Origin: Macrostomum lignano
Lineage: Eukaryota
DNA: 64,000 nt
NCBI GenBank assembly: GCA_002269645.1
Contig: NIVC01001532.1
Location: 142,384 to 206,383, forward strand
Reading direction: 5' to 3'
The notes under the pieces are model-generated. The model saw only the letters and a program-made list of their open reading frames with translations. It ran no database searches and was not told the DNA's origin. Shown piece after piece: positions 21,301 to 59,378 of this stretch (positions are counted from its first letter, which is position 1; each line of letters opens with the position of its first letter). The translations under genes and the position numbers were made by a program.

Positions 21301-22660
21301 AGCCTCACTGACACACCAGCCTCACTGACACCAGCCTCACTGACACACCAGCCTCACTGACACACCCAGCCTCACTGACACACCCAGCCTCACTGACACA
21401 CCAGCCTCACTGACACACCCAGCCTCACTGACACACCAGCCTCACTGACACACCCAGCCTCACTGACACCAGCCTCACTGACACACCAGCCTCACTGACA
21501 CACCCAGCCTCACTGACACACCCAGCCTCACTGACACACCAGCCTCACTGACACACCAGCCTCACTGACACACCAGCCTCACTGACACACCAGCCTCACT
21601 GACACACCCAGCCTCACTGACTCACCCAGCCTCACTGACACACCAGCCTCACTGACACACCAGCCTCACTGACACCAGCCTCACTGACACACCAGCCTCA
21701 CTGACACACCAGCCTCACTGACACACCCAGCCTCACTGACACACCAGCCTCACTGACACACCAGCCTCACTGACACACCAGCCTCACTGACACACCAGCC
21801 TCACTGACACACCCAGCCTCACTGACACACCAGCCTCACTGACACACCAGCCTCACTGACACACCAGCCTCACTGACACACCAGCCTCACTGACACACCA
21901 GCCTCACTGACACACCAGCCTCACTGACACACCAGCCTCACTGACACACCCAGCCTCACTGACACCAGCCTCACTGACACACCAGCCTCACTGACACCAG
22001 CCTCACTGACACACCCAGCCTCACTGACACCAGCCTCACTGACACACCCAGCCTCACTGACACACCAGCCTCACTGACACACCAGCCTCACTGACACACC
22101 TGCCTCACTGACACACCAGCCTCACTGACACACCAGCCTCACTGACACACCAGCCTCACTGACACACCAGCCTCACTGACACACCAGCCTCACTGACACA
22201 CCAGCCTCACTGACACACCCAGCCTCACTGACACACCAGCCTCACTGACACACCAGCCTCACTGACACACCAGCCTCACTGACACACCAGCCTCACTGAC
22301 ACACCAGCCTCACTGACACACCAGCCTCACTGACACACCCAGCCTCACTGACACACCAGCCTCACTGACACACCAGCCTCACTGACACACCAGCCTCACT
22401 GACACACCAGCCTCACTGACACACCAGCCTCACTGACACACCCAGCCTCACTGACACACCAGCCTCACTGACACACCAGCCTCACTGACACACCAGCCTC
22501 ACTGACACACCAGCCTCACTGACACACCAGCCTCACTGACACACCAGCCTCACTGACACACCCAGCCTCACTGACACACCCAGCCTCACTGACACACCAG
22601 CCTCACTGACACACCAGCCTCACTGACACACCAGCCTCACTGACACACTAGCCCCCCACT
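18330..22660. repeat. 4.3-kb minisatellite of 15/17/18-bp units (CAGCCTCACTGACAC[AC][C])
   Basis: Continuous array with length variants and recurring rare variants. Confidence 0.97.
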
Positions 22661-23049
22661 GACACGTAGATGGTAGAGGAGACAGTTAAGGTGAATATTC
22701 GCGGACCCTAAGACAGCTTCTTCCGCCTGCATGTTTTCCATGGATTTAAAATTGATTTTTGATTAAATCTTTGCGTCACTGAAAGTTGGCAAGGGAAAGA
22801 TAGCCCCCATAAAGATGCTGCTACCTGAGCCCTCTCCTCTACCGCCTTCTGCCCGCATTCTTCATCATCCTTTTACCCTCCATTTCTCCTCAATCAATTC
22901 TCCTCCTTCTTTCAGAGCCCCTGCACGCAAGGCAGGAAAAGGCCAATTTTCTTTATTATTCCTTTCCTGCGAAAGCGCTGACTGTTTATTGAGTCTGGCT
23001 GTCTGCATGCGACTCTCGGCTGCAGAATTCTCTCCAGTATGTTTCCGGG

Positions 23050-26000
23050 GGCGATTCTTTACTGGCGATTCTTTACTGGGGTGATTCTTTACTGGGGCGA
23101 TTCTTTACTGGCGATTCTTTACTGGGGCGATTCTTTACTGGGGCGATTATTTACTGGGGCGATTCTTTACTGGGGTGATTCTTTACTGGGGCGATTCTTT
23201 ACTAAGGCGATTCTTTACTGGGGCGATTCTTTACTGGGGTGATTCTTTACTGGGGCGATTATTTACTGGGGCGATTCTTTACTGGCGATTCTTTACTGGG
23301 GTGATTCTTTACTAGGGCGATTTTTTACTGGGGCGATTTTTTACTGGGGCGATTCTTTACTGGGGCGATTCTTTACGGGGCGATTCTTTACTGGGGCGAT
23401 TCTTTACTGGGGCGATTCTTTACTGGGGCGATTCTTTACTGGGGCGATTCTTTAGTGGGGCGATTCTTTACTGGGGCGAATTTTTACTGGGGCGATTCTT
23501 TACTGGGGCGATTCTTTACTGGGGCGATTCTTTACTGGGCCGATTCTTTACTGGGGCGATTCTTTACTAAGGCGATTCTTTACTGGGGCGATTCTTTACT
23601 GGGGCGATTCTTTACTGGGGCGATTCTTTACTGGGGCGATTCTTTACTGGGGCGATTCTTTACTGGGGCGATTCTTTACTAAGGCGATTCTTTACTGGGG
23701 CGATTCTTTACTGGGGCGATTCATTACTGGGGCGATTATTTACTGGGGCGATTCTTTACTGGGGCGATTCTTTACTGGGGCGAGTCTTTACTGGGGCGAT
23801 TCTTTACTGGGGCGATTCTTTACTAAGGCGATTCTTTACTGGGGCGATTATTTACTGGGGCGATTCTTTACTGGGGCGATTCTTTACTGGGCGATTCTTT
23901 ACTGGGCGATTCTTTACTGGGGCGATTATTTACTGGGGCGATTATTTACTGGGGCGATTCTTTACTGGGGCGATTCTTTACTAAGGCGAGTCTTTAGTGG
24001 GGCGATTCTTTACTGGGGCGATTCTTTACTGGGGCGATTATTTACTGGGGCGATTCTTTACTAGGGCGATTCTTTACTGGGGCGATTATTTACTGGGGCG
24101 ATTCTTTACTGGGGCGATTATTTACTGGGCGATTCTTTACTGAGGCGATTATTTACTGGGGCGATTCTTTACTAAGGCGATTCTTTACTGGGGCGATTAT
24201 TTACTGGGGCGATTATTTACTGGGGCGATTTTTTACTGGGGCGATTCTTTACTGGGGCGATTCTTTACTGGGGCGAGTCTTTACTGGGGCGAGTCTTTAG
24301 TGGGGCGATTCTTTACTGGGGCGAGTCTTTACTGGGGCGATTCTTTACTGGGGCGATTCTTTACTGGGGCGATTCTTTACTGGGGCGATTCTTTACTGGG
24401 GCGATTCTTTACTGGGGCGAGTCTTTAGTGGGCGATTCTTTACTGGGGCGATTGTTTACTGGGGCGATTCTTTACTGGGGCGATTATTTACTGGGGCGAT
24501 TCTTTACTGGGGCGATTCATTACTAAGGCGATTCTTTACTGGGGCGATTCTTTACTGGGGCGATTCTTTACTGGGGCGATTATTTACTGGGGCGATTCTT
24601 TACTGGGGCGATTCTTTACTGGGGCGATTCTTTACTGGGGCGATTATTTACTGGGGCGATTCTTTACTGGGGCGATTCTTTACTGGGGCGATTATTTACT
24701 GGGGCGATTCTTTACTGGGGCGATTCTTTACTGGGGCGATTATTTACTGGGGCGATTCTTTACTAAGGCGATTCTTTACTGGGGCGATTATTTACTGGGG
24801 CGATTCTTTACTGGGGCGATTTTTTACTGGGGCGATTCTTTACTGGGGCGATTCTTTACTGGGGCGAGTCTTTACTGGGGCGAGTCTTTAGTGGGGCGAT
24901 TCTTTACTGGGGCGAGTCTTTACTGGGGCGATTCTTTACTGGGGCGATTCTTTACTGGGGCGATTCTTTACTGGGGCGATTCTTTACTGGGGCGATTCTT
25001 TACTGGGGCGAGTCTTTAGTGGGCGATTCTTTACTGGGGCGATTGTTTACTGGGGCGATTCTTTACTGGGGCGATTATTTACTGGGGCGATTCTTTACTG
25101 GGGCGATTCTTTACTAAGGCGATTCTTTACTGGGGCGATTCTTTACTGGGGCGATTCTTTACTGGGGCGATTATTTACTGGGGCGATTCTTTACTGGGGC
25201 GATTCTTTACTGGGGTGATTCTTTTCTGGGGCCATTCTTTACTGGGGCGATTCTTTACTAAGGCGAGTCTTTAGTGGGGCGATTCTTTACTGGGGCGATT
25301 ATTTACTGGGGCGATTCTTTACTGGGGCGATTCTTTACTGGGGCGATTCTTTACTGGGGCGATTCTTTACTGGGGCGATTCTTTACTGGGGCGAGTCTTT
25401 ACTGGGCGATTCTTTACTGGGGCGATTATTTACTGGGGCAATTCTTTACTGGGGCGATTATTTACTGGGGCGATTATTTACTGGGGCGATTCTTTACTGG
25501 GGCGATTCTTTACTGGGGCGATTATTTACTGGGGCGATTCTTTACTGGGGCGATTCTTTACTGGGGCGATTCTTTACTGGGGCGATTCTTTACTGGGGCG
25601 ATTCTTTACTGGGGCGAGTCTTTAGTGGGCGATTCTTTACTGGGGCGATTGTTTACTGGGGCGATTCTTTACTGGGGCGAGTCTTTACTGGGGCGATTCT
25701 TTAGTGGGGCGATTCTTTACTGGGGCGAGTCTTTACTGGGGCGATTCTTTACTGGGGCGATTCTTTACTGGGGCGATTCTTTACTGGGGCGATTCTTTAC
25801 TGGGGCGATTCTTTACTGGGCGATTCTTTACTGGGGCGATTGTTTACTGGGGCGATTCTTTACTGGGGCGATTATTTACTGGGGCGATTCTTTACTGGGG
25901 CGATTCTTTACTGGGGCGATTCTTTACTAAGGCGATTCTTTACTGGGGCGATTCTTTACTGGGGCGATTATTTACTGGGGCGATTATTTACTGGGGCGAT

Positions 26001-29000
26001 TCTTTACTGGGGCGATTCTTTACTGGGGTGATTCTTTTCTGGGGCCATTCTTTACTGGGGCGATTCTTTACTGGGGCGATTATTTACTGGGCGATTCTTT
26101 ACTGGGGCGATTATTTACTGGGGCGATTCTTTACTGGGGCCATTCTTTACTGGGGCGATTCTTTACTGGGGCGATTCTTTACTGGGGCGAGTCTTTACTG
26201 GGGCGATTCTTTACTAGGGCGATTCTTTACTGGGGCGATTATTTACTGGGGCGATTATTTACTGGGGCGATTCTTTACTGGGGCCATTCTTTACTGGGGC
26301 GATTATTTACTGGGGCGATTCTTTACTGGGGCGAGTCTTTACTGGGGCGATTCTTTACTGGGGCCATTCTTTACTGGGGCGATTCTTTACTGGGGCGATT
26401 CTTTTCTGGGGCCATTCTTTACTGGGGCGATTCTTTACTGGGGCGATTATTTACTGGGGCGATTCTTTACTGGGGCGATTATTTACTGGGGCGATTCTTT
26501 TCTGGGGCGATTCTTTACTGGGGCGATTCTTTACTGGGGCGATTCTTTACTGGGGCGATTCTTTACTGGGGCGATTCTTTACTGGGGCGATTCTTTACTA
26601 AGGCGATTCTTTACTGGGGCGATTCTTTACTGGGGCGATTATTTACTGGGGCGATTATTTACTGGGGCGATTATTTACTGGGGCGATTCTTTACTGGGGC
26701 GATTCTTTACTGGGGCGATTATTTACTGGGGCGATTCTTTACTGGGGCGATTCTTTACTGGGGCGAGTCTTTAGTGGGGCGATTCTTTACTGGGGCGATT
26801 CTTTACTAAGGCGATTCTTTACTGGGGCGATTATTTACTGGGGCGATTATTTACTGGGGCGATTTTTTACTGGGGCGATTCTTTACTGGGGCGATTCTTT
26901 ACTGGGGCGAGTCTTTACTGGGGCGATTCTTTAGTGGGGCGATTCTTTACTGGGGCGAGTCTTTACTGGGGCGATTCTTTACTGGGGCGATTCTTTACTG
27001 GGGCGATTCTTTACTGGGGCGATTCTTTACTGGGGCGAGTCTTTAGTGGGCGATTCTTTACTGGGGCGATTGTTTACTGGGGCGATTCTTTACTGGGGCG
27101 ATTATTTACTGGGGCGATTCTTTACTGGGGCGATTCTTTACTGGGGCGATTCTTTACTGGGGCGATTCTTTACTGGGGCGATTCTTTACTAAGGCGATTC
27201 TTTACTGGGGCGATTCTTTACTGGGGCGATTCTTTACTGGGGCGATTCTTTACTAAGGCGATTCTTTACTGGGGCGATTCTTTACTGGGCCGATTCTTTA
27301 CTGGGGCGATTCTTTACTGGGGCGATTATTTACTGGGGCGATTCTTTACTGGGGCGAGTCTTTACTGGGGCGATTCTTTACTGGGGCCATTCTTTACTGG
27401 GGCGATTCTTTACTGGGGCGATTCTTTTCTGGGGCCATTCTTTACTGGGGCGATTCTTTACTGGGGCGATTATTTACTGGGGCGATTCTTTACTGGGGCG
27501 ATTATTTACTGGGGCGATTCTTTTCTGGGGCGATTCTTTACTGGGGCGATTCTTTACTGGGGCGATTCTTTACTAAGGCGATTCTTTACTGGGGCGATTC
27601 TTTACTGGGGCGATTCTTTACTGGGGCGATTCTTTACTAAGGCGATTCTTTACTGGGGCGATTCTTTACTGGGGCGAGTCTTTAGTGGGGCGATTCTTTA
27701 CTGGGGCGAATTTTTACTGGGGCGATTCTTTACTGGGGCGATTATTTACTGGGGCGATTATTTACTGGGGCGATTCTTTACTGGGGCGATTCTTTACTGG
27801 GGCGATTATTTACTGGGGCGATTCTTTACTGGGGCGATTCTTTACTGGGGCGATTCTTTACTGGGGCGATTCTTTACTAAGGCGATTCTTTACTGGGGCG
27901 ATTCTTTACTGGGGCGATTATTTACTGGGGCGATTCTTTACTGGGGCGATTCTTTACTGGGGCGATTCTTTACTGGGGCGATTCTTTACTGGGGCGATTC
28001 TTTACTGGGGCGATTCTTTACTGGGGCGATTCTTTACTGGGGCGATTATTTACTGGGGCGATTCTTTACTGGGGCGATTCTTTACTGGGGCGATTCTTTA
28101 CTGGGCGATTCTTTACTGGGGCGATTATTTACTGGGGCGATTCTTTACTGGGGCGATTCTTTACTGGGGCGATTCTTTACTGGGGCGATTCTTTACTGGG
28201 GCGATTCTTTACTAAGGCGATTCTTTACTGGGGCGATTCTTTACTGGGGCGATTATTTACTGGGGCGATTCTTTACTGGGGCGATTCTTTACTGGGGCGA
28301 TTCTTTACTGGGGCGATTCTTTACTGGGCGATTCTTTACTGGGGCGATTATTTACTGGGGCGATTATTTACTGGGGCGATTCTTTACTGGAGCGATTATT
28401 TACTAAGGCGAGTCTTTAGTGGGGCGATTTTTTACTGGGGCGATTATTTACTAAGGCGAGTCTTTAGTGGGGCGATTTTTTACTGGGGCGAATTTTTACT
28501 GGGGTGATTCTTTACTGGGGCGATTATTTACTGGGGCGATTCTTTACTGGGGCGATTATTTACTGGGGCGATTCTTTACTGGGGCCATTCTTTACTGGGG
28601 CGATTCTTTACTAAGGCGATTCTTTACTGGGGCGATTCTTTACTGGGGCGATTCTTTACTGGGGCGATTCTTTACTGGGGCGATTATTTACTGGGGCGAT
28701 TCTTTACTGGGGCGATTCTTTACTGGGGCGATTCTTTACTGGGCGATTCTTTACTGGGGCGATTATTTACTGGGGCGATTCTTTACTGGGGCGATTCTTT
28801 ACTGGGGCGAGTCTTTACTGGGGCGATTCTTTACTGGGGCGATTCTTTACTAAGGCGATTATTTACTGGGGCGATTCTTTACTGGGGCGAGTCTTTAGTG
28901 GGGCGATTCGTTACTGGGGCGATTCTTTACTAAGGCGATTCTTTACTTTGCGATTCTTTACTGGGGCCATTCTTTACTGGGGCGATTCTTTACTGGGGCG

Positions 29001-29088
29001 AGTCTTTAGTGGGGCGATTCTTTACTGGGGCGATTTTTTACTGGGGCGATTCTTTACTGGGGCGATTATTTACTGGGGCGATTCTTTG
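23050..29088. repeat. 6-kb 16-bp minisatellite (GGGGCGATTCTTTACT)
   Basis: Continuous array, which explains all RFFTGAILYWGDSLLG ORFs. Confidence 0.97.
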
Positions 29089-32078: not shown

Positions 32079-33551
32079 TTAACACACCGACTTCTCCGTG
32101 GCCATCTTGACCGTCTTCCTGCTGACCCCGGCCTCCTGGCCAGAAGAGCCTCGGTCCTGGCTGCCTGGTAGGCCAGCATCAACCAGAGCGGCTTTGTTGG
32201 TGGCCGCCGCCTTCACAGCCGCCATTTTGAAGGCCCGCTGATCGCGCAGGTGAATCTCCATCCGGGCGTTGACTGCGTTGGCAGCGGCGGCTGCCACTGC
32301 CGCCTGCTCGCGCTTGTTGGCCCGGTAGCGGCAGTGCACCCTGGCGCCTCTGGCAGCTCCGGGACCTCCGCCAACAAAGACGTTGCCTCCGCCGCCTCCG
32401 CCGCCGCCGCCGCATCGGCAGCGACAACACCGACAGAGAATCTGGCGCAGGGCCCGTCGGAACCGGGCATTCAGGCCGGCATAGATGATCGGATTGTACC
32501 AGATGTTGCTCATCGCGATCCAGTAGCAGATGCCGTGCAACAGGATTTCGTTCCTCGGCTCCTGGACGCTGCGCCAGTTGCTGCTGATGACGAAGAGGTG
32601 CAGCGGGGACCAGCTGATGAAGAACAGCACCACGACTAGCAGAAGCATCAGGATGGTGCGCCTCCTGGTGGCTAGACTCACGTTTGAGGCTCCTCCGTGT
32701 GCGACAGTGTCGCTGCCGCCGGCTTCCTCCAGCGCGTGGTTGGAAATCCACAGCGTCTTGATGACCCTGGCGTAAGCTGCGCAGATCAGCAGCAGCGGCA
32801 GCAGGTACTGCAAAGCGAATGCCGTGCAGGTGAACATCAGACGGCGGCTGGCCGAAGACTCACCAGCAATGAAGGCGCACACGGAGTCCATTCTGAAGTC
32901 GTACACCCGCCGGCTGGAGCTGGCGTTCAGCTTGTCGAAACTCTCAACTGTCGGGGACCCGAAGATAAACGTCGGCATGACACTGACGGTGGCGAGAAGG
33001 CAGGCGACAGCCCAGGAGATGCCAGCCATGGTGTACACAGCCAACTTGGTGAGACGCGGCTTCAGCGGCGACACGATCACCCGGTGACGCTCGAAGGCGA
33101 TGCAGACGAGTACGAAGGAGGCGGCGCTGGTGCACAGGCTGTTGGTGAAGTAGGCAAGGGCGCAGCCAGCCTTGCCGAGACGCCAGCCGTCGAACTGCGC
33201 CAGCGACTTCAGCAGGTTGATGGGCACGGAGAGGCACGCGAGGAGCATCTGGGCGACCGACAGGTTCAACAGGAAGATGTTCGTAGCGCTGCGCAACTGC
33301 GGTTTCCGCTGGATGACCAGACAGACCAAGCCGTTGCCGATGATGGAGACCAGCGCCATGGCAACAATCAGAGCGGCTATCAGCTCGCGAACCGGCCCGA
33401 TTAGAATGGCTAATCGGCTTCTAAACTCCGAACTGGCCTGGTTCAATCGGTTCAAGTAGTCGGTGATGTTGATCGAACCGGATATGTTCGCGCTGCTCAG
33501 GTGGCGGAGGAACAGCTCGGGGTCCAGCCCGCCAGAGGCTTGTGGAGCCAT
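32079..33551 (-). CDS. Class A neuropeptide GPCR (GPR83/RYamide/luqin-receptor-like), 490 aa, intronless
   Basis: ATG in AAAAAATGG context at 33551 (the track start at 33680 is TTG). Seven TM segments: GNGLVC, NLSVAQ, C..L in TM3, FERH..IVSPLKPR, QYLLP, FFISWSPL, YWIAMSNIWYNPIIY. N-glycosylation sequons NIS and NIT. Cys-rich helix 8 tail. Confidence 0.93.
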   Translation of the reverse strand: MAPQASGGLDPELFLRHLSSANISGSINITDYLNRLNQASSEFRSRLAILIGPVRELIAALIVAMALVSIIGNGLVCLVIQRKPQLRSATNIFLLNLSVAQMLLACLSVPINLLKSLAQFDGWRLGKAGCALAYFTNSLCTSAASFVLVCIAFERHRVIVSPLKPRLTKLAVYTMAGISWAVACLLATVSVMPTFIFGSPTVESFDKLNASSSRRVYDFRMDSVCAFIAGESSASRRLMFTCTAFALQYLLPLLLICAAYARVIKTLWISNHALEEAGGSDTVAHGGASNVSLATRRRTILMLLLVVVLFFISWSPLHLFVISSNWRSVQEPRNEILLHGICYWIAMSNIWYNPIIYAGLNARFRRALRQILCRCCRCRCGGGGGGGGGNVFVGGGPGAARGARVHCRYRANKREQAAVAAAAANAVNARMEIHLRDQRAFKMAAVKAAATNKAALVDAGLPGSQDRGSSGQEAGVSRKTVKMATEKSVC

Positions 33552-33949
33552 TTTTTCCTGTTTATTTTGAAGGGCTATGAGACAAGGCTTGGCAAAGATT
33601 GTGTGCTTATGGCTGTAGGGGTTTGATGAAGATGGGTTGGGGACTCGTATATATTTGCGGATGTCATCAGGTTTAGCCAATGGGAGTCTTCCAAGCGGCC
33701 GGGATTGACACGAAGCGGGATTCGAGTTTTCTACTGGCTATAATGAAACGCCAACGCTTGATCCTAATATGGGAAGCGTAGTAGCCCCGTGTTTTGGCAT
33801 GAATCGGATGCTTTTAGACTACTTATAGTAATTGGAGAGAGTATGAAACTTTAATGGCTGATTAATAGTGTTCGATTGGGAAATTATTAACAAGGGTAAT
33901 CCGCTAGGATTATTGGCTTGGGTTATCAATTAAAGATAATCAGCTAGGA

Positions 33950-34775: not shown

Positions 34776-35880
<1,105 letters not shown>

Positions 35881-36785
35881 GTTTGCCTCTGTGCAGCCAG
35901 CCTATCAGGCCCACCCGCAGGTCCCCAGCAGCTGGGCCAGCCCTGCTAAAATAGTGCGGAGTCAGAGAGCCTTGCTGCCCCACTGGCTGAGCCCAGCTAA
36001 TGCAGCCAACCCAGCCGATCCGAAAAGCAATTCGATGCATTAAAATGCGCCAAAAATTATAATTCACTTTGTTTTAATGAGCCAATGCAAAAAAAGCAAT
36101 TCATTCATTTTTCTATTTTTCACTACGACTAAGTGCTTTCTTCTTTGTTAGAGATCTCTGCAACAGAAAGTACATTTATGAAACATGAATTGCTAATTGA
36201 CCATTCCGAACTAAAACATCAAGCTATAATACTGATTTCATCAATAAAAACGATCAGAAGAGCAGCATGCATGTTAGTGTGTAATGAGTTGCGGATTGCT
36301 CCGATCCAGTGCATCATGGCTCATCCTGCTTGCGATCTAAATAAGTAGGGAAACTTATTTTAAGAACCTTGAAGCTCTTAATAAATTTGATGCAGCAGGC
36401 TGTTAACGAGATTGAGCGGCTGTGGGAATCATTGCGGCTCTGTGACTTTGCTTAATGTTTAGCCATAGCTTTACATTTAAATCTTTTCATTCCTTAAATC
36501 TATCAGGGCGCCGTTTCTATCTGCTCTATTCTCTATCTCGCTTGCATATCTCCCTCTCTCTCTCTCTCTCTCTCCCTCTCCCTCTCCCTCTCCCTCTCCC
36601 TCTCTCTCTCCCCCTCTCTCCCTCCCTCTCTCTCTCTCCCTCTCCCTCTCTCTCTCCCTCTCCCTCTCTCTCCCCCTCTCTCCCTCCCTCTCTCTCTCTC
36701 TCTCCCTCTCTCTCTCTCCCCCTCTCTCCCTCTCTCTCTCTCTCCCTCTCTCTCTCTCCCCCTCTCTCACTCTCTCTCCCCTCTT

Positions 36786-36817
<32 letters not shown>

Positions 36818-36996
36818 CCTCTCTCTCTCTCTCTCTCCCTCTCTCACTTCAATCTCTTTTTTCTCTTTCACCCCTTACCCCTCTTTCTCTTCTCCCTGTC
36901 CCCTTCTATCTCCCACTTCCCTGTCTCCCTCCGTCTCCCTATCTCCTCTACTTCTCTCTCTCTCTCTGCCTCTCTCATCCGCTGTGGGCCTCTCCC

Positions 36997-39486
36997 TCAG
37001 CTGAGCGAACTGCTGGGCACACAGTAGGCCCAGTACACAATGTTAAACAAGCCAAACAAGCCCGGATAGAGGAACAAGCAGATGAAGTCCAGCCTCGATG
37101 GTGTCAATCTCCAATTAGACTTCTTCCGTTTGAACAATTTAGCCAATGTCTCCCGAAGAATGGAGTCTTGCTGCAGCAATACCTGTTGTTGCAGTTGCTG
37201 CTGCTGCTGTTGTTGTTGTTGTTGTTGGCGTTGCCGTACCACAGCCCTACTCTCTCTTCAGTCTGACCCGTTCTCGGAACTCGTTCCAAAGGGCCCGGCA
37301 TTCTTCGGGCATGGCGCATAAGTCGCCCATCTCCGTGATGCCGGTCTTCCTCCTGATGTTGTCCATCACTGGGCACTTCAACAGTACGTGCTCCGTGCCT
37401 TCCTCCTCGAGGTTGCACAGCCGGCACGTTCCACTCTCCCTGGTTCCAATCCGAGCACCATACTCCGCCAGCTCCGCGTGGTGTCCGGTCCTGAACCTGG
37501 CAAAATCGCGCCTGGCCGCTCTGCACCACTTTCCTTCCTTCCGCCAGTCCGGCTGCTTCTTCGCGTAGATTTCCTTCGCCCTCTCATGCTTCCACTCCAT
37601 CCTGCCTTCCAGGGCTCTACGAATGTGGTTAGTGGCCGCTTTCCTTGTCCAGAAGACACCTTCCTCGCCTCGTCCCTCTGCCGCCAGCTCATTTCCTTCC
37701 ACTCCGACATGTCCTGCCACCCACTTCATCGTCAGGGTTCTTTCAGGCCACTTCGCGATCTTTAGCCAGCAATGCCTCACGTCCTGCCATTCACCCTTCC
37801 ATCTGTCCTGGAAAGCCCGGAGCGCTGCTTGACTGTCACTCACGATGGTGGCCGTTTTCCAGTCTGCCGCGTCCAACCAATCGATTGCCATGCGGAGTGC
37901 CCTGATCTCGGCTTGCGTGGACGAGCATCCCTGTCCCGCTGGTCCACGAGCTTCGCCTTGCTTCGTGCTGCCCCGGTAAATGATGAGACCAGCTCCACCT
38001 TTACCGTCCTTGCCCACCGACCCATCAGTGTACAGGATGTAGTCGGTGTCTCTGTTCGCGATCCAGCTCTCTGCGGTTTCCTTGTTCTCTTTCTCGGTTG
38101 CCTGCCGGTTCGTGAGCTCCTCCAAGGCGACCTTAGTTCTGATTTGAACCCACGGTGGGATTTGCCTGCTCCGCTCTTTCGGCTCCGGCTCCGGTAACGC
38201 CAGCCTGGTCCAGTCCTCGCGACACTTCTGCCTCCAGTTGGGCTTCTTCAGCCTCTTCTGCACGCGCCTATTGGCCATCTCATTCCTAGGCGAGTCCGCT
38301 GGTAGCCGTCGGTAGCTATCATAGGTCTTCAGCGTCTGGAACTGCAGCCTGCTTTCCAGCGATGGTAGCCCGGCTTCTTGCAGCACCGCTTCCACCGGCG
38401 TGCTAGCCAGTACTCCGGCAATGGCTCTGGCGGCTGCCCGCTGGCACCTCTCCAGCTTCTCCAGGTGTACCTTGGCCAGCCATGGGTACCATGCCGGGGC
38501 CGCGTACTCCAGGATCGGTCTCACTAGCGCCAGGTAGGCCATCCTCGCAATCTCCAAGTTTAGACCTCCCTCCAAGCAACACAGCTTCTTCAGCAGGTGC
38601 GTCCTCGCCCTGGCCTTCGTCGATAGCATCCTCACGTGTTCAGAGAACGTGAGCTTTTGGTCCACCGTGACCCCGAGGTATCGGGGGGCCGAGGTCGTTC
38701 TGATGATGTCATCTCCAATTCTCAAGTCGAGTCGCATTCCTCGCTCCGCTTGGTTGTTGCTATAGACGCATGACTCGCACTTCTTAGTGTTCAAGGGGAG
38801 GTACCAGGCCCTGGTCCACTCGTGCACCTTCCGTAGTGCCTCCTGGTGCTGCTGCTGTTGCTGCTGTTGCTGCTGCTGCTGATGCAACTGCGGCAACTGC
38901 TGTTGCTGACTTCCCAGAAGCAGCGGAACATCCCTTGAAGCCGCTCTGGACCTCTTGGCCGCCAGAGCCTGCAGTTGTTTCCTTCGTCTCTCTTTCCTAA
39001 TGCGCAACAGATTAATGACCATGTACTCCAGCAGGGACAGGTAGACGAACACGATGCAACCGATGTGCCAGATCCCCAGCGTGGTCACATAGGACACTCT
39101 GGCAGCTTGGACTCCAGAGCCAGGCTCTGGGTGATCTGAGCCAAGAAGCAGACAGTCGACAAGGACACCCTTGCTGGTGGTGATTTATGATCAATAGCGA
39201 ACGAGGACCAAGCCGCAAGGACAATGAAGGTCGACGGTAGATAGTTGTACAGTATGTAGTAGGAGTGCTTCCTCTTTAGCTGGAAGCTGGCGGACAGATA
39301 ACTGAAGTTCCGCTGCGTCGCTTCTGAGTAGGCGTTGCCGCTGTCGAATGTCACCACGGGCGCGAAGAACTGGCTCAGCGAGGACGAGTCCTTGATTGAC
39401 ATGCTCTGATCGGCGAAGTGATCTGACCAGCTCAGAACCTGGTCTCCTGTGTGCATTTCAAATACACTGATGTCCATGTCGCATGC
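36997..39486 (-). pseudogene. Duplicated terminal exon (2B) of the Cys-loop channel, with a 1-bp deletion near 39101 and a LINE insertion in the polyQ tract
   Basis: Intact ttttcAG acceptor at 39487-39488. M1-M2 read to LESKLP, then ctctggcagc versus ctctgggcagc in copy A shifts the frame. M3 and the loop run into the LINE. M4 and the stop lie at 36997-37212. Confidence 0.85.
37213..38846 (-). mobile_element. 5'-truncated non-LTR retrotransposon (I-group-like ORF2: RT C-terminus, RNase H, CCHC knuckle)
   Basis: QEALRKVHEW..N..KC and RYLGVTVDQKLTF (late RT motifs), LVRPILEYAAPAW, RNase H YTDGS / AEIRA / SDSQAAL / WVAGHVGVEGNE, and CRLC..EE.TEHVLLKC. About 533 codons without a stop, TAG at 37247, short 3'UTR, (CAA)5 tail at 37213-37227. 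Candidate TSD CAACAGCAGCAGCA at 38847-38860 and 37199-37212. Confidence 0.93.
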
Positions 39487-39529: not shown

Positions 39530-40230
<701 letters not shown>

Positions 40231-41023
40231 GTTTGCCTCTGTGCAGCCAGCCTATCAGGCCCACCCGCAGGTCCCCAGCAGCTGGGCCAGCCCTGCTAAA
40301 ATAGTGCGGAGTCAGAGAGCCTTGCTGCCCCACTGGCTGAGCCCAGCTAATGCAGCCAACCCAGCCGATCCGAAAAGCAATTCGATGCATTAAAATGCGC
40401 CAAAAATTATAATTCACTTTGTTTTAATGAGCCAATGCAAAAAAAGCAATTCATTCATTTTTCTATTTTTCACTACGACTAAGTGCTTTCTTCTTTGTTA
40501 GAGATCTCTGCAACAGAAAGTACATTTATGAAACATGAATTGCTAATTGACCATTCCGAACTAAAACATCAAGCTATAATACTGATTTCATCAATAAAAA
40601 CGATCAGAAGAGCAGCATGCATGTTAGTGTGTAATGAGTTGCGGATTGCTCCGATCCAGTGCATCATGGCTCATCCTGCTTGCGATCTAAATAAGTAGGG
40701 AAACTTATTTTAAGAACCTTGAAGCTCTTAATAAATTTGATGCAGCAGGCTGTTAACGAGATTGAGCGGCTGTGGGAATCATTGCGGCTCTGTGACTTTA
40801 CTTAATGTTTAGCCATTGCCTTACATTTAAATCTTTTCATTCCTTAAATCTATCAGGGCGCCGTTTCTATCTGCTCTATTCTCTATCTCGCTTGCATATC
40901 TCCCTCTCTCTCTCTCTCTCTCCCTCTCCCTCTCTCTCTCCCCCTCTCTCCCTCCCTCTCTCTCTCTCTCCCTCTCTCTCTCTCCCCCTCTCTCACTCTC
41001 TCTCCCCTCTCTCTCTCCCTCTC

Positions 41024-41054
<31 letters not shown>

Positions 41055-41214
41055 CCCTCTCTCACTTCAATCTCTTTTTTCTCTTTCACCCCTTACCCCT
41101 CTTTCTCTTCTCCCTGTCCCCTTCTATCTCCCACTTCCCTGTCTCCCTCCGTCTCCCTATCTCCTCTACTTCTCTCTCTCTCTCTGCCTCTCTCATCCGC
41201 TGTGGGCCTCTCCC

Positions 41215-42069
41215 TCAGCTGAGCGAACTGCTGGGCACACAGTAGGCCCAGTACACAATGTTAAACAAGCCAAACAAGCCCGGATAGAGGAACAAGCAGA
41301 TGAAGTCCAGTCTCGATGGTGTCAATCTCCAATTAGACTTCTTCCGTTTGAACAATTTAGCCAATGTCTCCCGAAGAATGGAGTCTTGCTGCAGCAATAC
41401 CTGTTGTTGCAGTTGCAGTTGCTGCTGCTGCTGTTGCTGCTGCTGTTGCAGTTGCTGCTGCTGATGCAACTGCGGCAACTGCTGTTGCTGACTTCCCAGA
41501 AGCAGCGGAACATCCCTTGAAGCCGCTCTGGACCTCTTGGCCGCCAGAGCCTGCAGTTGTTTCCTTCGTCTCTCTTTCCTAATGCGCAACAGATTAATGA
41601 CCATGTACTCCAGCAGGGACAGGTAGACGAACACGATGCAACCGATGTGCCAGATCCCCAGCGTGGTCACATAGGACACTCTGGGCAGCTTGGACTCCAG
41701 AGCCAGGCTCTGGGTGATCTGAGCCAAGAAGCAGACAGTCGACAAGGACACCCTTGCTGGTGGTGATTTATGATCAATAGCGAACGAGGACCAAGCCGCA
41801 AGGACAATGAAGGTCGACGGTAGATAGTTGTACAGTATGTAGTAGGAGTGCTTCCTCTTTAGCTGGAAGCTGGCGGACAGATAACTGAAGTTCCGCTGCG
41901 TCGCTTCTGAGTAGGCGTTGCCGCTGTCGAATGTCACCACGGGCGCGAAGAACTGGCTCAGCGAGGACGAGTCCTTGATTGACATGCTCTGATCGGCGAA
42001 GTGATCTGACCAGCTCAGAACCTGGTCTCCTGTGTGCATTTCAAATACACTGATGTCCATGTCGCATGC
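41215..42069 (-). CDS. Cys-loop anion channel 1, terminal coding exon (end of ECD, M1-M4)
   Basis: ttttcAG acceptor at 42070-42071. Reads ACDMDISVF...LKRKHSYYILYNYLPS (M1), PPARVSL (M2), LPRVSY, M3, polyQ loop, LDFICLFLYPGLFGLFNIVYW (M4), then the stop. Confidence 0.9.
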   Translation of the reverse strand, partial: ACDMDISVFEMHTGDQVLSWSDHFADQSMSIKDSSSLSQFFAPVVTFDSGNAYSEATQRNFSYLSASFQLKRKHSYYILYNYLPSTFIVLAAWSSFAIDHKSPPARVSLSTVCFLAQITQSLALESKLPRVSYVTTLGIWHIGCIVFVYLSLLEYMVINLLRIRKERRRKQLQALAAKRSRAASRDVPLLLGSQQQQLPQLHQQQQLQQQQQQQQQQLQLQQQVLLQQDSILRETLAKLFKRKKSNWRLTPSRLDFICLFLYPGLFGLFNIVYWAYCVPSSSLS

Positions 42070-42112: not shown

Positions 42113-42793
<681 letters not shown>

Positions 42794-42821: not shown

Positions 42822-43430
42822 CTGAGTGTCGAAGGGAAAACGGCGGACATCCATGTGACAGTGGAAGCGCAGGTTGAGCTTCTGGTTGTACTGCAGGGTG
42901 CCGTTGGGCCACAGCCACAACAGGAAGTTCCTGGACGGCAGGTCGTGTCTGAGAACGTCTTTGGCATTCTTAAAGAACACGCCGGGCTTCCAGACGGACT
43001 CGGCGATCTGGCTGAGCACGAGGACAGCGGAGTGACCGGTGTAGCGCAGCCTGGGATCCGTCCATCGCATCAGCAGCACCAGCTCTATGGCGAACTCCAT
43101 GTTGATCATGTTCACCGGACCGAAGCTGTCAATCTTCAGGCTCACCTGCACCCGAGTCGGGCCGCCATCAGGCTGCGGAACCGGACGAAACAGGTTGTCA
43201 TAGCGACGAGGATTGACCAGTTGGCTGACGAAATCCGTCAGGCTCATGTTGCCGAGTTTGTGCAACGGCTGCTGCCGATGCGACTCCGGAGCCGCCGACG
43301 GTTGCCAGGTAGTTGCTATGGGAGTCGACCATGTTGATTCCGAGCCACCCTGAGCAGCATGAACTGCTGTCAGAAACTTTGAAGTGTTGATTAAGAGGAG
43401 CAGCAGTGAGTATTGAAGTTTTGAAGACAT
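42822..43430 (-). CDS. Cys-loop anion channel 1, first coding exon (signal peptide and ECD); full protein ~487 aa
   Basis: ATG at 43430, hydrophobic signal, [38 protein letters not shown], then CAG|GT phase 0. Splicing to ACD gives a canonical C-x13-C loop. A possible 84-nt 5'UTR intron lies at 43441-43524 (GTAAGT...AAG). Confidence 0.88.
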
Positions 43431-45610: not shown

Positions 45611-46825
45611 ATGCCCCGTCTCAGCAGTTCAAGAGCTTTCTTCGACGACCTCTCGTGGCACTTCACGGCCGAGTCGCTGTTTCTGCCGGACGATGACCTG
45701 TCGGACGAGCTGGCATGCCTGAGCAGCAATAACAGCTTCGACAACATCGATAGGCCCATGGTCTATCAGGCTATTGTCCTTGTGTTCACCCCGCTCGTAG
45801 CCTGTCTCAGCATCTTGGCTGAGCTAGTGCTGCTGCTAATACTGTTGAGACTGCTCAAAACTACTGGCTTATTGTTTTACATGCTGCTGGGGATGAAGGC
45901 TGGCACAGATCTGCTCATGCTCAGCCTGTGGCTGGTGTCCGACCTTCTGGACTCGTGCCCGTACGTCTGCCCGTTCTCCACGGGTCTGCAGCTGTTCCGC
46001 TACAAGTCGGTGTTCTACGCCAGGATCTACTATCCGCTGGCCAACGCCTGCAGCGCGGCGAGCACCTACCTGCTGCTGGCTGTCACCCTGCTCTGGTGCG
46101 TGGTGGTGCACAGGAGCAGCCAGCACTGCCGGTGCCGCATCAAGTGCAGCTGGAGCTTCATCATAGGAGCTCTGGCCGCTTGGCTACTGGCTCTGGGCAT
46201 TAATCTGCCGCGTAGCTTCTGTCTAGTCTATCGTTGCTATGGCAACCAGCTGACTCCGGTGAGCGCGGCGGACTGGTGCCACAATGTTTACCGGTGGCTG
46301 GCGCTGAGCCTGATGCAGATCGGCCCCCTGCTGGGCCTGCTCTGTCTGAGCTGCTACCTGCTGCACCGAATGCTCCGGTTGGCCAGACGCTCCAACAGAG
46401 CGCTCTATCGTTACCATAGCAACGCATGTCATAGAAACAAAAACAAACAACGCCGTCGTCATAGCAACCGCCGCACTCGTTGCATCCTGATGATGAACGC
46501 GTGCTTCCTAGTCGGCCAAGTCCCGGCATTCCTGGTGCACCCGGACTCCAGCCAGGCAGATTTGCTGGAGCGGGAGCTGTCAGCATCCGCCCGGGTGGTC
46601 ATCGCCAGCCTCATCAACTGCCTGGAGGCGCTGAGCTACACTGCAAACCTGCTAGTGCTGGCCAAGTGCGATTCCAGGTTCAAGGAGCTCACGAACTCAG
46701 CAGCCGCCGGCTTCAAGAAGTTTTGCCGGCCTCAGCCGGAGCGGTGCAGCGGCCTCGAAGCCACCAGCTGGAGCCGGGAGGCTGCGACAGTGCAATGTCA
46801 GGATGCTGTCAAGACTGTCACATGA
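45611..46825 (+). CDS. Divergent rhodopsin-like 7TM receptor (FMRFamide-receptor/Srw/flatworm Rho-L-like), 404 aa, intronless
   Basis: ATG at 45611. Seven hydrophobic segments with family-type YPLANACSAASTYLLLAVT (TM3), INLPR (TM4), GPLLGL (TM5), FLVGQVP (TM6) and LEALSYTANL (TM7). Confidence 0.85.
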   Translation: MPRLSSSRAFFDDLSWHFTAESLFLPDDDLSDELACLSSNNSFDNIDRPMVYQAIVLVFTPLVACLSILAELVLLLILLRLLKTTGLLFYMLLGMKAGTDLLMLSLWLVSDLLDSCPYVCPFSTGLQLFRYKSVFYARIYYPLANACSAASTYLLLAVTLLWCVVVHRSSQHCRCRIKCSWSFIIGALAAWLLALGINLPRSFCLVYRCYGNQLTPVSAADWCHNVYRWLALSLMQIGPLLGLLCLSCYLLHRMLRLARRSNRALYRYHSNACHRNKNKQRRRHSNRRTRCILMMNACFLVGQVPAFLVHPDSSQADLLERELSASARVVIASLINCLEALSYTANLLVLAKCDSRFKELTNSAAAGFKKFCRPQPERCSGLEATSWSREAATVQCQDAVKTVT

Positions 46826-51534: not shown

Positions 51535-51570
<36 letters not shown>

Positions 51571-51607
51571 CAGACAGACAGACACACAGACAGACAGACA
51601 GACAGAC

Positions 51608-51638
<31 letters not shown>

Positions 51639-51653
51639 CAGACAGACAGACAC

Positions 51654-51684
<31 letters not shown>

Positions 51685-51811
51685 CAGACAGACAGACACA
51701 CAGACAGACAGACAGACAGACAGACACACAGACACAGACACACAGACACACAGACACACAGACACACAGACACACAGACAGACAGACAGACAGACACTAA
51801 GACAGACACTA

Positions 51812-51851
<40 letters not shown>

Positions 51852-51852
51852 C

Positions 51853-51928
<76 letters not shown>

Positions 51929-51979
51929 CTAAGACAGACAGACAGACACAGACACACAGACACACAGACACACAGACAC

Positions 51980-52014
<35 letters not shown>

Positions 52015-52017
52015 CTA

Positions 52018-52090
<73 letters not shown>

Positions 52091-52261
52091 CTAAGACAGA
52101 CAGACAGACAGACAGACACTAAGACAGACAGACAGACACTAAGACAGGCAGACAGACAGACAGACACTAAGACAGACAGACAGACAGACAGACAGACACT
52201 AAGACAGGCAGACAGACAGACAGACAGACAGGCAGACAGACAGACAGACACTAAGACAGGC

Positions 52262-52341
<80 letters not shown>

Positions 52342-52400
52342 GGACAAACGGACAGACAGACAGACAGACAGATGGACAAACGGACAGACAGACAGACACT
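51535..52400. repeat. (GACA)n array
   Basis: Directly visible. Confidence 0.95.
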
Positions 52401-57610: not shown

Positions 57611-57660
57611 TAGCAGTTATTCGAACGCCAAGCACTTCAATTACTACTATTCCTTCGCAG

Positions 57661-57803
57661 GACTACGCGCTCACAGTGTACCTCCGTCTCCAATGGACAG
57701 ATCCGCGGCTAAAATTCAACGCCTCCCAAGCTGGCGGTAGAAGTAAAATAAAACTTGGCGAGAAAATCTGGGAGAGAATCTGGGTCCCAGATGTGTTTCT
57801 CAG
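57661..57803 (+). CDS. Channel 2 exon (DYALTVYLRLQWTDPRL...IWVPDVFL)
   Basis: ttcgcAG acceptor and AG|GT donor. Loop D YLR and loop A WVPD. Confidence 0.92.
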
Positions 57804-57834
57804 GTGATTGGATTAAGGGTAGCTGCTTGGAATG

Positions 57835-58665
57835 TATACTGGGGAGAGAGTTTGGCTGGCTGCTTGGATGTCACTGGGGGGAGAGTTTGGCTGGGGTGCT
57901 TGGATGTTCACTGGGGGGAGAGTTTGGCTGGGGTGCTTGGATGTTCACTGGGGGAGAGTTTGGCTGGGGTGCTTGGATGTTCACTGGGGGGGAGAGTTTG
58001 GCTGGGGTGCTTGGATGTTCACTGGGGGGAGAGTTTGGCTGGGGTGCTTGGATGTTCACTGGGGGGAGAGTTTGGCTGGGGTGCTTGGATGTTCACTGGG
58101 GGAGAGTTTGGCTGGGGTGCTTGGATGTTCACTGGGGGGAGAGTTTGGCTGGGGTGCTTGGATGTACACTTGGGGGAAATAGTTTGGCTGGGTTGCTTGG
58201 ATGTTCACTGGGGGAGAGTTTGGCTGGGGTGCTTGGATGTTCACTGGGGGAGAGTTTGGCTGGGGTGCTTGGATGTTCACTGGGGGGAGAGTTTGGCTGG
58301 GGTGCTTGGATGTTCACTGGGGGAAATAGTTTGGCTGGGTTGCTTGGATGTTCACTGGGGGAGAGTTTGGCTGGGGTGCTTGGATGTTCACTGGGGGGGG
58401 AGTTTGGCTGGGGTGCTTGGATGTTCACTGGGGGGGGAGAGTTTGGCTGGGGTGCTTGGATGTTCTGGGGGGAGAGTTTGGCTGGGGTGCTTGGATGTTC
58501 TGGGGGGAGAGTTTGGCTGGGGTGCTTGGATGTACACTTGGGGGAAAGAGTTTGGCTGGGTTGCTTGGATGTCACTGGGGGAGAGTTTGGCTGGGGTGCT
58601 TGGATGTTCACTGGGGGGAGGGTTTGGCTGGGGTGCTTGGATGTACACTGGGGGGAGAGTTTGGC
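57835..58665. repeat. ~37-bp G-rich intronic minisatellite (GGGGAGAGTTTGGCTGGGGTGCTTGGATGTTCACT)
   Basis: GGATGTTCAC recurs at 57902 and 57939. G-run length varies. Confidence 0.92.
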
Positions 58666-58760
58666 CGAGTGTCTACAAAATTAAATTGACAAAGCTGGCT
58701 GTGTAGCACAAGACTAACCAAAGCTATTTTCTTCAAACAATAACAAAAAATGCCATCTAG

Positions 58761-58850
58761 AAACGAGAAGAAGGCGGACTTCCATTCGGCCACAATACCG
58801 AATAGGCTGATGAATTTGGAGAGCGACGGTCAGATTTGGTATGTAATCAA
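58761..58850 (+). CDS. Channel 2 exon (RNEKKADFHSATIPNRLMNLESDGQIWYVIK)
   Basis: tctAG acceptor, AA|GTGAGT donor, NEK..FH...PN motif. Confidence 0.92.
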
Positions 58851-58961
58851 GTGAGTTCAATTCGCTATCCGCTTCTTGTGCCTACTAAAAGTAGCAAGAA
58901 TACATATTGTAATGATTTTAAACGACGTATGATTAAACTAAAATCTATTTGTTTTAACCAG

Positions 58962-59044
58962 GCTGTCAATGACTCTAGCCTGCGACATGGATCTGAAGAA
59001 ATATCCATTGGACACGCAGCATTGCCCGATGATGTTTGAAAGTT
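58962..59044 (+). CDS. Channel 2 Cys-loop exon, 83 nt (LSMTLACDMDLKKYPLDTQHCPMMFES)
   Basis: C-x13-C loop, ccAG acceptor and GTAAGG donor. Confidence 0.95.
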
Positions 59045-59099
59045 GTAAGGAAATTTTCTCTAAAAGTTTATTACCAAATCTACAAGTAGGTATCTCAGT

Positions 59100-59378
59100 A
59101 ACCCAATTCAGGTACCTCAATACCCAATCCGGGTACCTCAATACCCAATCCAGGTATCCCAATACCCAATCCAGGTACCTCAATACCGTATCCAGGTATC
59201 CCAATACCCAATCCAGGTACCTCAATACCCAATCCAGGTATCCCAATACCCAATCCAGGTATCTCAATACCCAATCCAGGTATCCCAATACCCAATCCAG
59301 GTATCTCAATAACCAATCCAGGTATCCAAATACCCAATCCCGGTATCTCAATACCCAACCCAGGTACCTCAATACCCG
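59100..59378. repeat. 21-bp intronic minisatellite (AATACCCAATCCAGGTATCTC)
   Basis: Directly visible, abutting the acceptor. Confidence 0.9.

What the first reader, a model, noticed from the sequence alone, without database searches (positions are those of the whole stretch)
36997..39486. LINE RT/RNase H fused in frame to a ligand-gated channel exon via its polyQ tract: a potential chimeric alternative terminal exon
Seen: the duplicated exon 2B keeps its splice acceptor. Its M3 and intracellular loop read without a break into ~533 stop-free codons of LINE ORF2 (...LPQLHQ11-HQEALRKVHEW... RNase H... CCHC knuckle). Inference: if the single missing G near 39101 is a read error, exon 1 spliced to exon 2B encodes a ~949-aa subunit with M1-M3 and a cytoplasmic RT-thumb/RNase H/Zn-knuckle tail in place of M4. 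If the deletion is real, the product stops just after M2 (~336 aa). In-frame joining has a 1-in-3 chance by luck, so this may be a neutral recent accident. The RNase H keeps three acidic residues but reads GNELAA where GNELAD is expected.
Basis: partly seen in the sequence, partly recalled or inferred. Interest (0 to 1): 0.8.

Follow-up and report, generated by a model that had tools for sequence, protein, structure and literature searches.

The report
LINE-disrupted duplicate exon of a channel gene
A flatworm chloride-channel gene carries a second, tandem copy of its last exon that was hit by a truncated jumping gene (LINE) and also has a one-base frameshift. The long channel-LINE reading frame is most likely an accident in a dead spare exon, not a new protein.

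Summary
The minus strand carries a two-exon GlyR/GABA-A/GluCl-like Cys-loop channel gene, and its closest database match is from Macrostomum lignano. Exon 1 is 43430-42822 and the complete exon 2A is 42069-41215, giving 487 aa. A second copy, exon 2B, starts at 39486. It is identical to 2A over 66 nt of intron and about 600 nt of exon, except for one missing base (CCC to CC at 39102) in the M2-M3 linker. A 1.63-kb 5'-truncated LINE (about 38846-37213) sits in sense orientation in its CAG/CAA tract. The LINE holds an RT thumb, RNase H and a CCHC knuckle. It joins the M3/loop frame, giving a 616-codon open frame. As assembled, that frame cannot be reached from the 2B acceptor: translation stops at 39085, giving 336 aa. 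The duplicated unit is bounded by three (GACA)n arrays, and the middle array is a hybrid of the outer two. This is the signature of unequal crossing-over, or of a mis-join. The two units differ by 4 substitutions in 1,549 unique nt. I found no evidence of expression or selection and no independent copy of the locus. Best reading: a young duplicate terminal pseudo-exon with an accidental in-frame LINE junction (a 1-in-3 chance). This is ordinary, and interest is low.

The parts
42822..43430 (-). Exon 1 of the Cys-loop channel gene: signal peptide and most of the ligand-binding domain. It has 203 codons, is phase 0, and the donor is CAG|GTGTGC.
   Evidence: Pfam Neur_chan_LBD 1.4e-26
42113..42793 (-). 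(GACA)n array 1, which fills intron 1 (intron 42821-42070).
   Evidence: TRF; unit map
41215..42069 (-). Exon 2A: the intact terminal exon, holding the end of the Cys-loop, M1-M3, a loop with Q/L-rich tract, M4 and the stop. With exon 1 it encodes 487 aa.
   Evidence: Pfam Neur_chan_memb 1.1e-25; PDB GlyR/GABA-A/GluCl matches at 1e-52
40229..41214 (-). 3' flank of unit A: a GA-rich tract (41190-40900) and 672 nt of unique sequence. There is no canonical AATAAA; ATTAAA lies at 40428.
39530..40229 (-). (GACA)n array 2, a hybrid. Its 5' part resembles array 3 and its 3' part resembles array 1. It is the junction between the two duplicated units.
   Evidence: (interruption maps)
38847..39486 (-). 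Exon 2B, 5' part: acceptor, M1-M3, loop and 11-Gln tract. It is identical to 2A except for the one-base deletion at 39102 (M2-M3 linker). The frame from the acceptor stops at 39085-39087.
37213..38846 (-). 5'-truncated non-LTR (LINE) fragment of about 1,634 nt, in sense orientation. It holds the RT thumb (starting about 25 aa after the xADD box), an RNase H lacking the last catalytic Asp, a CX2CX8HX4C knuckle, the stop at 37247-37249, a 19-nt 3' UTR and a (CAA)5 tail. The ends are uncertain by a few nt because the flanks are CAG/CAA repeats.
36997..37212 (-). Exon 2B, 3' remainder: the rest of the Q tract, M4 and the stop. It is cut off from the rest of 2B by the LINE. It differs from 2A by one synonymous change (37093 G versus 41311 A). 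A candidate 14-nt target-site duplication, CAACAGCAGCAGCA, lies at 37212-37199 and 38860-38847.
35879..36996 (-). 3' flank of unit B: a GA-rich tract (longer than in A) and 672 nt of unique sequence with 3 substitutions relative to A.
34776..35879 (-). (GACA)n array 3, the downstream end of the duplicated block. It is followed by unique sequence with no further exon-2 copy.

Best explanation
This is a recently duplicated terminal exon whose distal copy is a pseudo-exon. The proposed steps follow; steps 1 to 3 are inferred from anatomy that the sequence shows directly.

1. **Original locus.** The anion-type Cys-loop channel gene had a (GACA)n array in its only intron and another downstream of the gene.
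2. **Duplication.** Unequal crossing-over between these two arrays duplicated the 2.6-kb block (exon 2 plus 3' flank) in tandem. This left a hybrid middle array.
3. **LINE insertion.** An I-group-type LINE then inserted by target-primed reverse transcription into the CAG/CAA tract of the distal copy, in sense orientation. Its (CAA)n 3' tail possibly paired with the CAA/CAG target. It was 5'-truncated inside the RT, so only the thumb, RNase H and CCHC knuckle remain. By a 1-in-3 chance the truncation point fell in frame with the channel loop.
4. **Frameshift.** A one-base loss in the M2-M3 linker, whether a real mutation or a consensus error, further breaks 2B.
5. **Expected expression (inference).** The gene is expressed from exon 1 plus the proximal, intact exon 2A, whose acceptor is identical and is transcribed first. 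Exon 2B is used rarely or never. Any product would be non-functional: either 336 aa ending after M2, or, if the deletion is an error, a 949-aa subunit without M4.
For: -
- Units A and B are near-identical. There is 1 indel in 666 nt. There is 1 synonymous substitution in 211 nt and 3 substitutions in 672 nt.
- The middle (GACA)n array starts like array 3 ('(28) cacacaca (10) gacggacagaaa') and ends like array 1 ('gatagacacaca ... ctaagacactaag').
- No third exon-2 copy exists in the window.
- The LINE domains follow the order of distant relatives. The fragment begins just after the xADD box.
- An RNase H placed after the RT is typical of I-group clades (PMC4640811).
- A candidate TSD and a (CAA)5 tail are present.
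- The deletion falls in the conserved LP(K/R)VSYV linker.
- Divergence between units is 0.26%, well below the 1.39% reported between the L1 and L2 subgenomes (PMC10733133). This favours paralogous copies on one chromosome over collapsed homeologues.
Against: - No read-level or independent-assembly evidence could be obtained. Exact look-ups and homology searches found no other copy of the locus or of this LINE family.
- The hybrid array would look the same if an assembler had mis-joined two haplotypes.
- The TSD and the tail lie in low-complexity sequence and cannot be proven from one copy.
- Non-use of 2B is inferred from its position, not shown.
- If the window comes from a Canu plus Pilon assembly (PMC5730564), a copy-specific homopolymer deletion inside an otherwise identical duplicate is a plausible surviving error.
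Confidence: 0.7

Rival explanations
1. Assembly artefact. 2A and 2B are two alleles (or homeologous copies) of a single exon 2, one carrying a polymorphic LINE insertion. The assembler strung them in tandem through the long (GACA)n arrays. On the LINE-bearing chromosome the disrupted exon would then be the only exon 2. That allele would have to produce the truncated or chimeric product, making it a null or dominant-negative allele.
For: - The genome is a neopolyploid with three subgenomes. It is described as hard to assemble, and 180-312 Mb of Mlig_3_7 is reported as duplicated (PMC10733133; PMC5730564).
- The units are bounded by 0.7-1.1-kb microsatellite arrays, which invite mis-joins.
- The units differ by real substitutions, as alleles would.
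Against: - Divergence of 0.26% is about five-fold below the reported L1/L2 subgenome divergence, and the small chromosomes are reported to be homozygous.
- The 2.6-kb unit plus its arrays is short enough to be spanned by single long reads. A false tandem would therefore need chimeric reads (inference).
- The three arrays differ in internal block lengths, so no simple overlap-collapse is evident.
Confidence: 0.2
2. Functional chimeric alternative terminal exon. The deletion is a consensus error. A fraction of transcripts splice exon 1 to 2B and yield a 949-aa subunit with M1-M3 and a cytoplasmic RT-thumb/RNase H/CCHC tail. This subunit would have a regulatory or dominant-negative role.
For: - The acceptor is intact and identical to that of 2A.
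- The junction is in frame and the LINE ORF is open to its own stop.
- The deletion lies in a homopolymer inside an exact duplicate, where short-read polishing can fail (plus inference).
Against: - As assembled, the frame is broken.
- 2B lies behind a complete 2A with the same acceptor.
- Established knowledge of Cys-loop receptors, not tested here, indicates that M4 is needed for assembly and surface expression.
- The RT lacks its catalytic palm and the RNase H lacks its last catalytic Asp, so the tail has no expected enzymatic activity.
- An open frame in a young insertion needs no selection.
- No homologous chimera exists in 5.8 billion proteins.
Confidence: 0.04

Closest known systems
Gene-TE chimeric ORFs and exonised or exon-inserted LINE fragments (5'-truncated non-LTR insertions in coding exons)
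   Same: It is a sense-oriented, 5'-truncated LINE inside a coding exon. The host frame reads into the TE ORF and ends at the TE's stop. The flanks have a low-complexity target and a possible TSD.
   Different: The insertion is in a redundant, duplicated terminal exon rather than the working one. No transcript evidence exists. The host frame upstream is also broken by a 1-nt deletion.
Tandem exon or segmental duplication by unequal crossing-over between flanking repeats (non-allelic homologous recombination)
   Same: There are two 2.6-kb units, each bounded by the same repeat. The middle repeat is a hybrid of the outer two.
   Different: The recombination substrates are tetranucleotide microsatellite arrays, not dispersed TEs or segmental duplications. 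An assembly mis-join would look the same.
[quoted passage not shown]
   Same: The domain order is RT, RNase H, then CX2CX8HX4C. D-E-D-H of the RNase H are conserved (the clade list is from PMC4640811).
   Different: Only the last third of ORF2 is present. The best relatives are at most 30% identical and unnamed, so no clade can be assigned. The last catalytic Asp is missing.
Microsatellite-targeting LINEs (for example Togen on (TG)n, PMC4640811; R1-clade Waldo, Mino and Kibi from my own knowledge)
   Same: The element lies inside a trinucleotide repeat, and its 3' end is a (CAA)n run that matches the target repeat.
   Different: There is a single copy only, so target specificity cannot be tested. 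A random hit with tail/target microhomology explains it equally well.
Anion-selective Cys-loop receptors (GlyR alpha, GABA-A beta/alpha, GluCl)
   Same: The exon 1 + 2A product has the ligand-binding domain, a C-x13-C loop, PAR before M2, M1-M4, and matches at 1e-52 to GlyR structures.
   Different: Identity is only about 26-28% to named receptors, and the ligand is unknown. The 2B-derived products lack M3-M4 (as assembled) or M4 (if repaired).

Membership tests
Cys-loop ligand-gated ion channel (exon 1 + 2A product) | Neur_chan_LBD plus Neur_chan_memb domains and a C-x13-C loop | tested here: met
   Pfam 1.4e-26 and 1.1e-25. [15 protein letters not shown] spans the splice junction.
Cys-loop ligand-gated ion channel (exon 1 + 2A product) | Four transmembrane helices M1-M4; anion-type PAR motif before M2 | tested here: met
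   The alignment to GlyR alpha-2 covers M1-M3 and M4. PPARVSL is present.
Cys-loop ligand-gated ion channel (exon 1 + 2B product) | Complete M1-M4 in one frame from the acceptor | tested here: not met
   A stop at 39085 follows M2 as assembled. With a base restored, M4 is replaced by the LINE ORF.
Non-LTR retrotransposon, I group | RT domain followed by RNase H and a C-terminal CCHC motif | tested here: met
   Pfam RVT_1 (C-terminal 44 positions only), RNase_H 4.7e-13 and zf-RVT. The order is the same as in 11 relatives.
Non-LTR retrotransposon, I group | APE endonuclease and a complete RT palm (autonomous element) | tested here: not met
   The fragment starts about 25 residues after the xADD box and nothing upstream belongs to the element. 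This is expected for a 5'-truncated copy.
Non-LTR retrotransposon, I group | RNase H catalytic set D-E-D-H-D | tested here: not met
   D273, E312, D336 and H378 are conserved. The 'AD' of GNExAD is absent, a 4-residue gap in alignment A1.
Non-LTR retrotransposon, I group | Target-site duplication and a defined 3' tail, confirmed on several copies | tested here: inconclusive
   A 14-nt CAACAGCAGCAGCA repeat and a (CAA)5 run are present, but they lie in low-complexity DNA. No second copy was found in the window or the databases.
Alternative terminal exon / TE exonisation | Usable splice acceptor | tested here: met
   The 66 nt upstream of 39486 are identical to those upstream of 42069.
Alternative terminal exon / TE exonisation | Open frame from the acceptor into the TE | tested here: not met
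   The 1-nt deletion at 39102 shifts the frame, and a stop follows at 39085.
Alternative terminal exon / TE exonisation | Transcripts that use the exon | not testable with these tools
   No RNA-seq or cDNA data are reachable. The protein collection holds no such chimera.
Tandem duplication by unequal crossing-over | Units bounded by the same repeat, with a hybrid repeat at the junction | tested here: met
   Interruption maps of the three (GACA)n arrays; unit alignments.
Tandem duplication by unequal crossing-over | Both units present on one DNA molecule | not testable with these tools
   This needs raw long reads or PCR.

The most novel reading that the evidence does not exclude
The one-base deletion is a consensus error. 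A measurable share of transcripts then splice exon 1 to exon 2B. This would give a Cys-loop subunit with M1-M3 and a cytoplasmic LINE-derived RT-thumb/RNase H-like/zinc-knuckle tail, acting for example as a dominant-negative or RNA-binding channel subunit. It would be a very young host-LINE domain fusion caught at birth. A second untested point is that the LINE family may target CAA/CAG repeats through its (CAA)n tail, which would bias it towards polyQ-coding exons.
Probability: 0.04. Interest if true: 0.5.

Novelty: new member of a known kind. Interest (0 to 1): 0.17.

Why it matters
If the best explanation holds, this is a clean textbook snapshot and nothing more. It shows microsatellite arrays acting as substrates for exon duplication. 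It also shows a spare exon absorbing a LINE insertion that would have destroyed the gene had it hit the working copy. Its practical value is for annotation. Gene models here should join exon 1 to 2A and mark 2B plus the LINE as a pseudo-exon, and the 616-codon ORF should not be called a gene. It would matter more only if transcripts and protein from the fusion were shown, because LINE ORF2 fragments fused to host membrane proteins are rarely documented at birth.

Tried and rejected
- **Exact look-ups.** I looked up the 281-aa exon-2A ORF, the 616-aa chimeric ORF and the old UniRef model P0001 in the assembly collection. None was on record, so no independent assembly of the locus could be compared.
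- **Junction query.** A 265-aa junction-spanning query against 5.8 billion proteins returned only distant LINE relatives (37-46% identity over the LINE part). No chimera appeared.
- **LINE query.** The 531-aa LINE part gave relatives of at most 30% identity, mostly unnamed. Clade assignment below 'I-group-like' was abandoned.
- **Second LINE copy.** I searched the window for another copy to fix the element's ends and tail. None was found.
- **P0001.** The M. lignano UniRef model (UniRef100_A0A1I8FDT7) reads KLPRVSY without the frameshift. It is itself riddled with frameshift-like errors and stops at ...LLEY, so it cannot say which exon-2 copy it represents.
- **Cryptic intron.** I considered whether the LINE could be spliced out as an intron. 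The CAG|GTATTG...CTGCAG after the Q tract is only 12 nt and is present in 2A too, so I rejected this.
- **Rfam.** A scan of the whole window found nothing.
- **Poly(A) signal.** No AATAAA follows the 2A stop, only variants and an ATTAAA 789 nt downstream. The 3'-end site of 2A is not located.

Full report
**1. What is in the sequence**

The gene lies on the minus strand.
- Exon 1 is an ATG-initiated exon (43430-42822, 203 codons). It encodes a signal peptide and most of a neurotransmitter-gated channel ligand-binding domain (Pfam Neur_chan_LBD, 1.4e-26). It ends ...[13 protein letters not shown]|gtgtgc.
- The only intron (42821-42070) is filled by a 0.7-kb (GACA)n array.
- Exon 2A (42069-41215) begins ACDMD..., which completes a C-x13-C Cys-loop. 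It continues through M1-M3, a Q/L-rich cytoplasmic loop and M4 to a stop.
- The spliced product is 487 aa.
- It matches glycine-receptor, GABA-A and GluCl structures at about 1e-52 and has the anion-type PAR motif before M2.
- The only close database protein is a frameshift-ridden UniRef model from Macrostomum lignano (P0001, UniRef100_A0A1I8FDT7). The window therefore comes from that flatworm or a very close relative.
- The tandem-array-rich landscape of the window fits what is published for that genome (PMC5730564).

**2. The duplicated exon**

A second copy, exon 2B, starts at 39486.
- Across 666 nt (66 nt of intron plus the first 600 nt of the exon) 2A and 2B are identical, except that CCC in 2A (41685) is CC in 2B (39102).
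- The acceptor context is therefore exactly the same.
- The deletion lies in the conserved M2-M3 linker LP(R/K)VSYV. It makes the frame that enters at the acceptor stop at 39085. The product would be 336 aa.
- Downstream of the LINE, the rest of exon 2B (37212-36997) differs from 2A by one synonymous substitution.
- The 672-nt unique 3' flank differs by three substitutions.
- Overall the two units differ by 4 substitutions in 1,549 unique nt (0.26%) and one indel.

**3. The LINE**

Between 38846 and 37213 sits 1.63 kb that is absent from 2A.
- Its reading frame contains the last about 44 positions of Pfam RVT_1, a full RNase_H (4.7e-13) and zf-RVT.
- It ends with its own stop (37249-37247), a 19-nt 3' UTR and (CAA)5.
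- Its nearest relatives in 5.8 billion proteins are at most 30% identical. They have the same order: RT, RNase H, CCHC.
- Alignment with 11 of them shows that the fragment begins about 25 residues after the xADD catalytic box, so it is thumb only.
- The same alignment shows that D, E, D and H of the RNase H and the CX2CX8HX4C knuckle are conserved. The 'AD' of the GNExAD motif is missing; MAFFT places a four-residue gap there.
- An RNase H downstream of the RT is a trait of I-group clades (PMC4640811). No finer assignment is possible.
- A 14-nt CAACAGCAGCAGCA repeat flanks the insert (38860-38847 and 37212-37199). This is compatible with a target-site duplication but weak, because the target is a CAG/CAA repeat.
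- No other copy of the element exists in the window.

**4. The fusion frame**

The M3/loop frame of 2B runs without a stop into the LINE frame. This gives the 616-codon ORF 39097-37247.
- This is real, but three points take away its force.
  - The junction being in frame has a 1-in-3 prior.
  - The 533 open LINE codons are expected for a young insertion. The host flanks are only 0.26% diverged.
  - The fusion frame is not the frame that enters at the 2B acceptor, unless the one-base deletion is an error.
- Whether the deletion is an error cannot be decided here.
  - If the window comes from Mlig_3_7, that assembly is Canu consensus of PacBio CLR reads polished only with short reads (PMC5730564).
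  - In an exact duplicate, short reads carrying CCC would map to the error-free copy, so a copy-specific deletion could survive (inference).
  - Against this, real indels are expected at a fraction of the four real substitutions seen.
  - No other frameshift is seen in about 4 kb of coding sequence in the window.
  - I rate it about even.

**5. How the arrangement arose**

- Three (GACA)n arrays bound the units: array 1 (intron), array 2 (between the units) and array 3 (downstream).
- Their interruption maps show that array 2 begins like array 3: '(28) cacacaca (10) gacggacagaaa' against '(26) cacacaca (18) gacggacagaaa'.
- Array 2 ends like array 1: 'gaaa (n) gatagacacaca (n) ... ctaagacactaag'.
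- This is the expected product of unequal crossing-over between the intron array and the downstream array, which duplicates exon 2 and its flank.
- The same picture would arise if an assembler had chained two alleles through the arrays.
- The low divergence, compared with the 1.39% reported between the two large-chromosome subgenomes (PMC10733133), favours a real duplication. So does the short unit length, which single long reads should span.
- I put the real duplication at roughly 3:1 over a mis-assembly.
- The LINE insertion followed the duplication, or it sat on one of the recombining alleles.
- Its sense orientation and its position in the CAG/CAA tract could reflect pairing of a (CAA)n RNA tail with the nicked target during target-primed reverse transcription. 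This is an inference from one copy.

**6. Function**

- The working gene is exon 1 plus exon 2A.
- Exon 2B lies 2.6 kb further on, behind an identical acceptor and behind 2A's own 3' flank. That flank has no canonical AATAAA; variants and an ATTAAA at 40428 are present.
- Use of 2B would need skipping of 2A and read-through of its 3'-end site.
- Either possible 2B product lacks M4. In Cys-loop receptors M4 is needed for assembly, which is established knowledge and was not tested here.
- The LINE tail has no RT palm and an incomplete RNase H catalytic set.
- The most likely state is a silent or rarely used pseudo-exon.

**7. What could not be done**

- No reads, transcripts or second assembly were reachable.
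The sequence is identical for 66 nt of intron and 384 nt of exon.
- Long-read cDNA, or RT-PCR from exon 1 into the RNase H region, is needed instead.

**8. Verdict**

- The interpretation as a chimeric alternative terminal exon is not supported by the sequence as it stands and is unlikely on position and protein architecture.
- This is an ordinary, if neatly preserved, case of exon duplication between microsatellite arrays followed by LINE disruption of the spare copy.
- Interest is 0.17. The novel reading, an expressed fusion, has a probability of about 0.04.

Noticed in passing
window 57655-61858, + strand: A second, divergent Cys-loop channel gene, about 33-37% identical to the first. It shows exon-like matches at about 57.66, 58.97 (Cys-loop region, Pfam Neur_chan_LBD 4e-07), 60.2 and 61.7 kb. 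The exons are separated by introns packed with tandem arrays.
   Followed up: partly
window 32079-33680, - strand: A single-exon 533-aa ORF encodes a rhodopsin-family GPCR (Pfam 7tm_1, 2.6e-45). It lies 1.1 kb beyond (GACA)n array 3.
   Followed up: partly
window 1-64000: A large share of the window is covered by about 35 distinct tandem arrays with periods of 4-246 nt. Examples are a 16-nt unit x379 at 23048-29087 and a 17-nt unit x252 at 18332-22653. Further (GACA)/(CAGA)n arrays lie at 51535-52398 and 62590-63092, so substrates for unequal crossing-over are abundant.
   Followed up: no
window 8932-9437 and 13248-13871: Two arrays of the same 23-nt unit lie in inverted orientation (about 92% identity). 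They flank a 21-nt array (10714-11852) and a PTB/PID-like ORF (11865-12656, - strand; Pfam PID_2 4e-05, below the cut-off).
   Followed up: no
window 45611-46825, + strand: A 404-aa ATG-initiated ORF with hydrophobic segments has no Pfam match. The old UniRef model P0001 fused an antisense piece of this region (45869-46126) to the channel gene, which shows how error-prone earlier models of this locus were.
   Followed up: partly
window 37680-37700, - strand (RNase H of the LINE): Relative to 11 distant relatives, the copy lacks four residues including the last catalytic Asp (GNE[xADx]LAxEG becomes GNELAAEG), yet the frame has no stop or frameshift. Whether this is specific to the copy or a trait of the family is unknown.
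   Followed up: partly
window 36550-36972 versus 40900-41190: The GA-rich tract just after the stop codon is 423 nt in unit B and 291 nt in unit A. This is the largest length difference between the units apart from the LINE.
   Followed up: no
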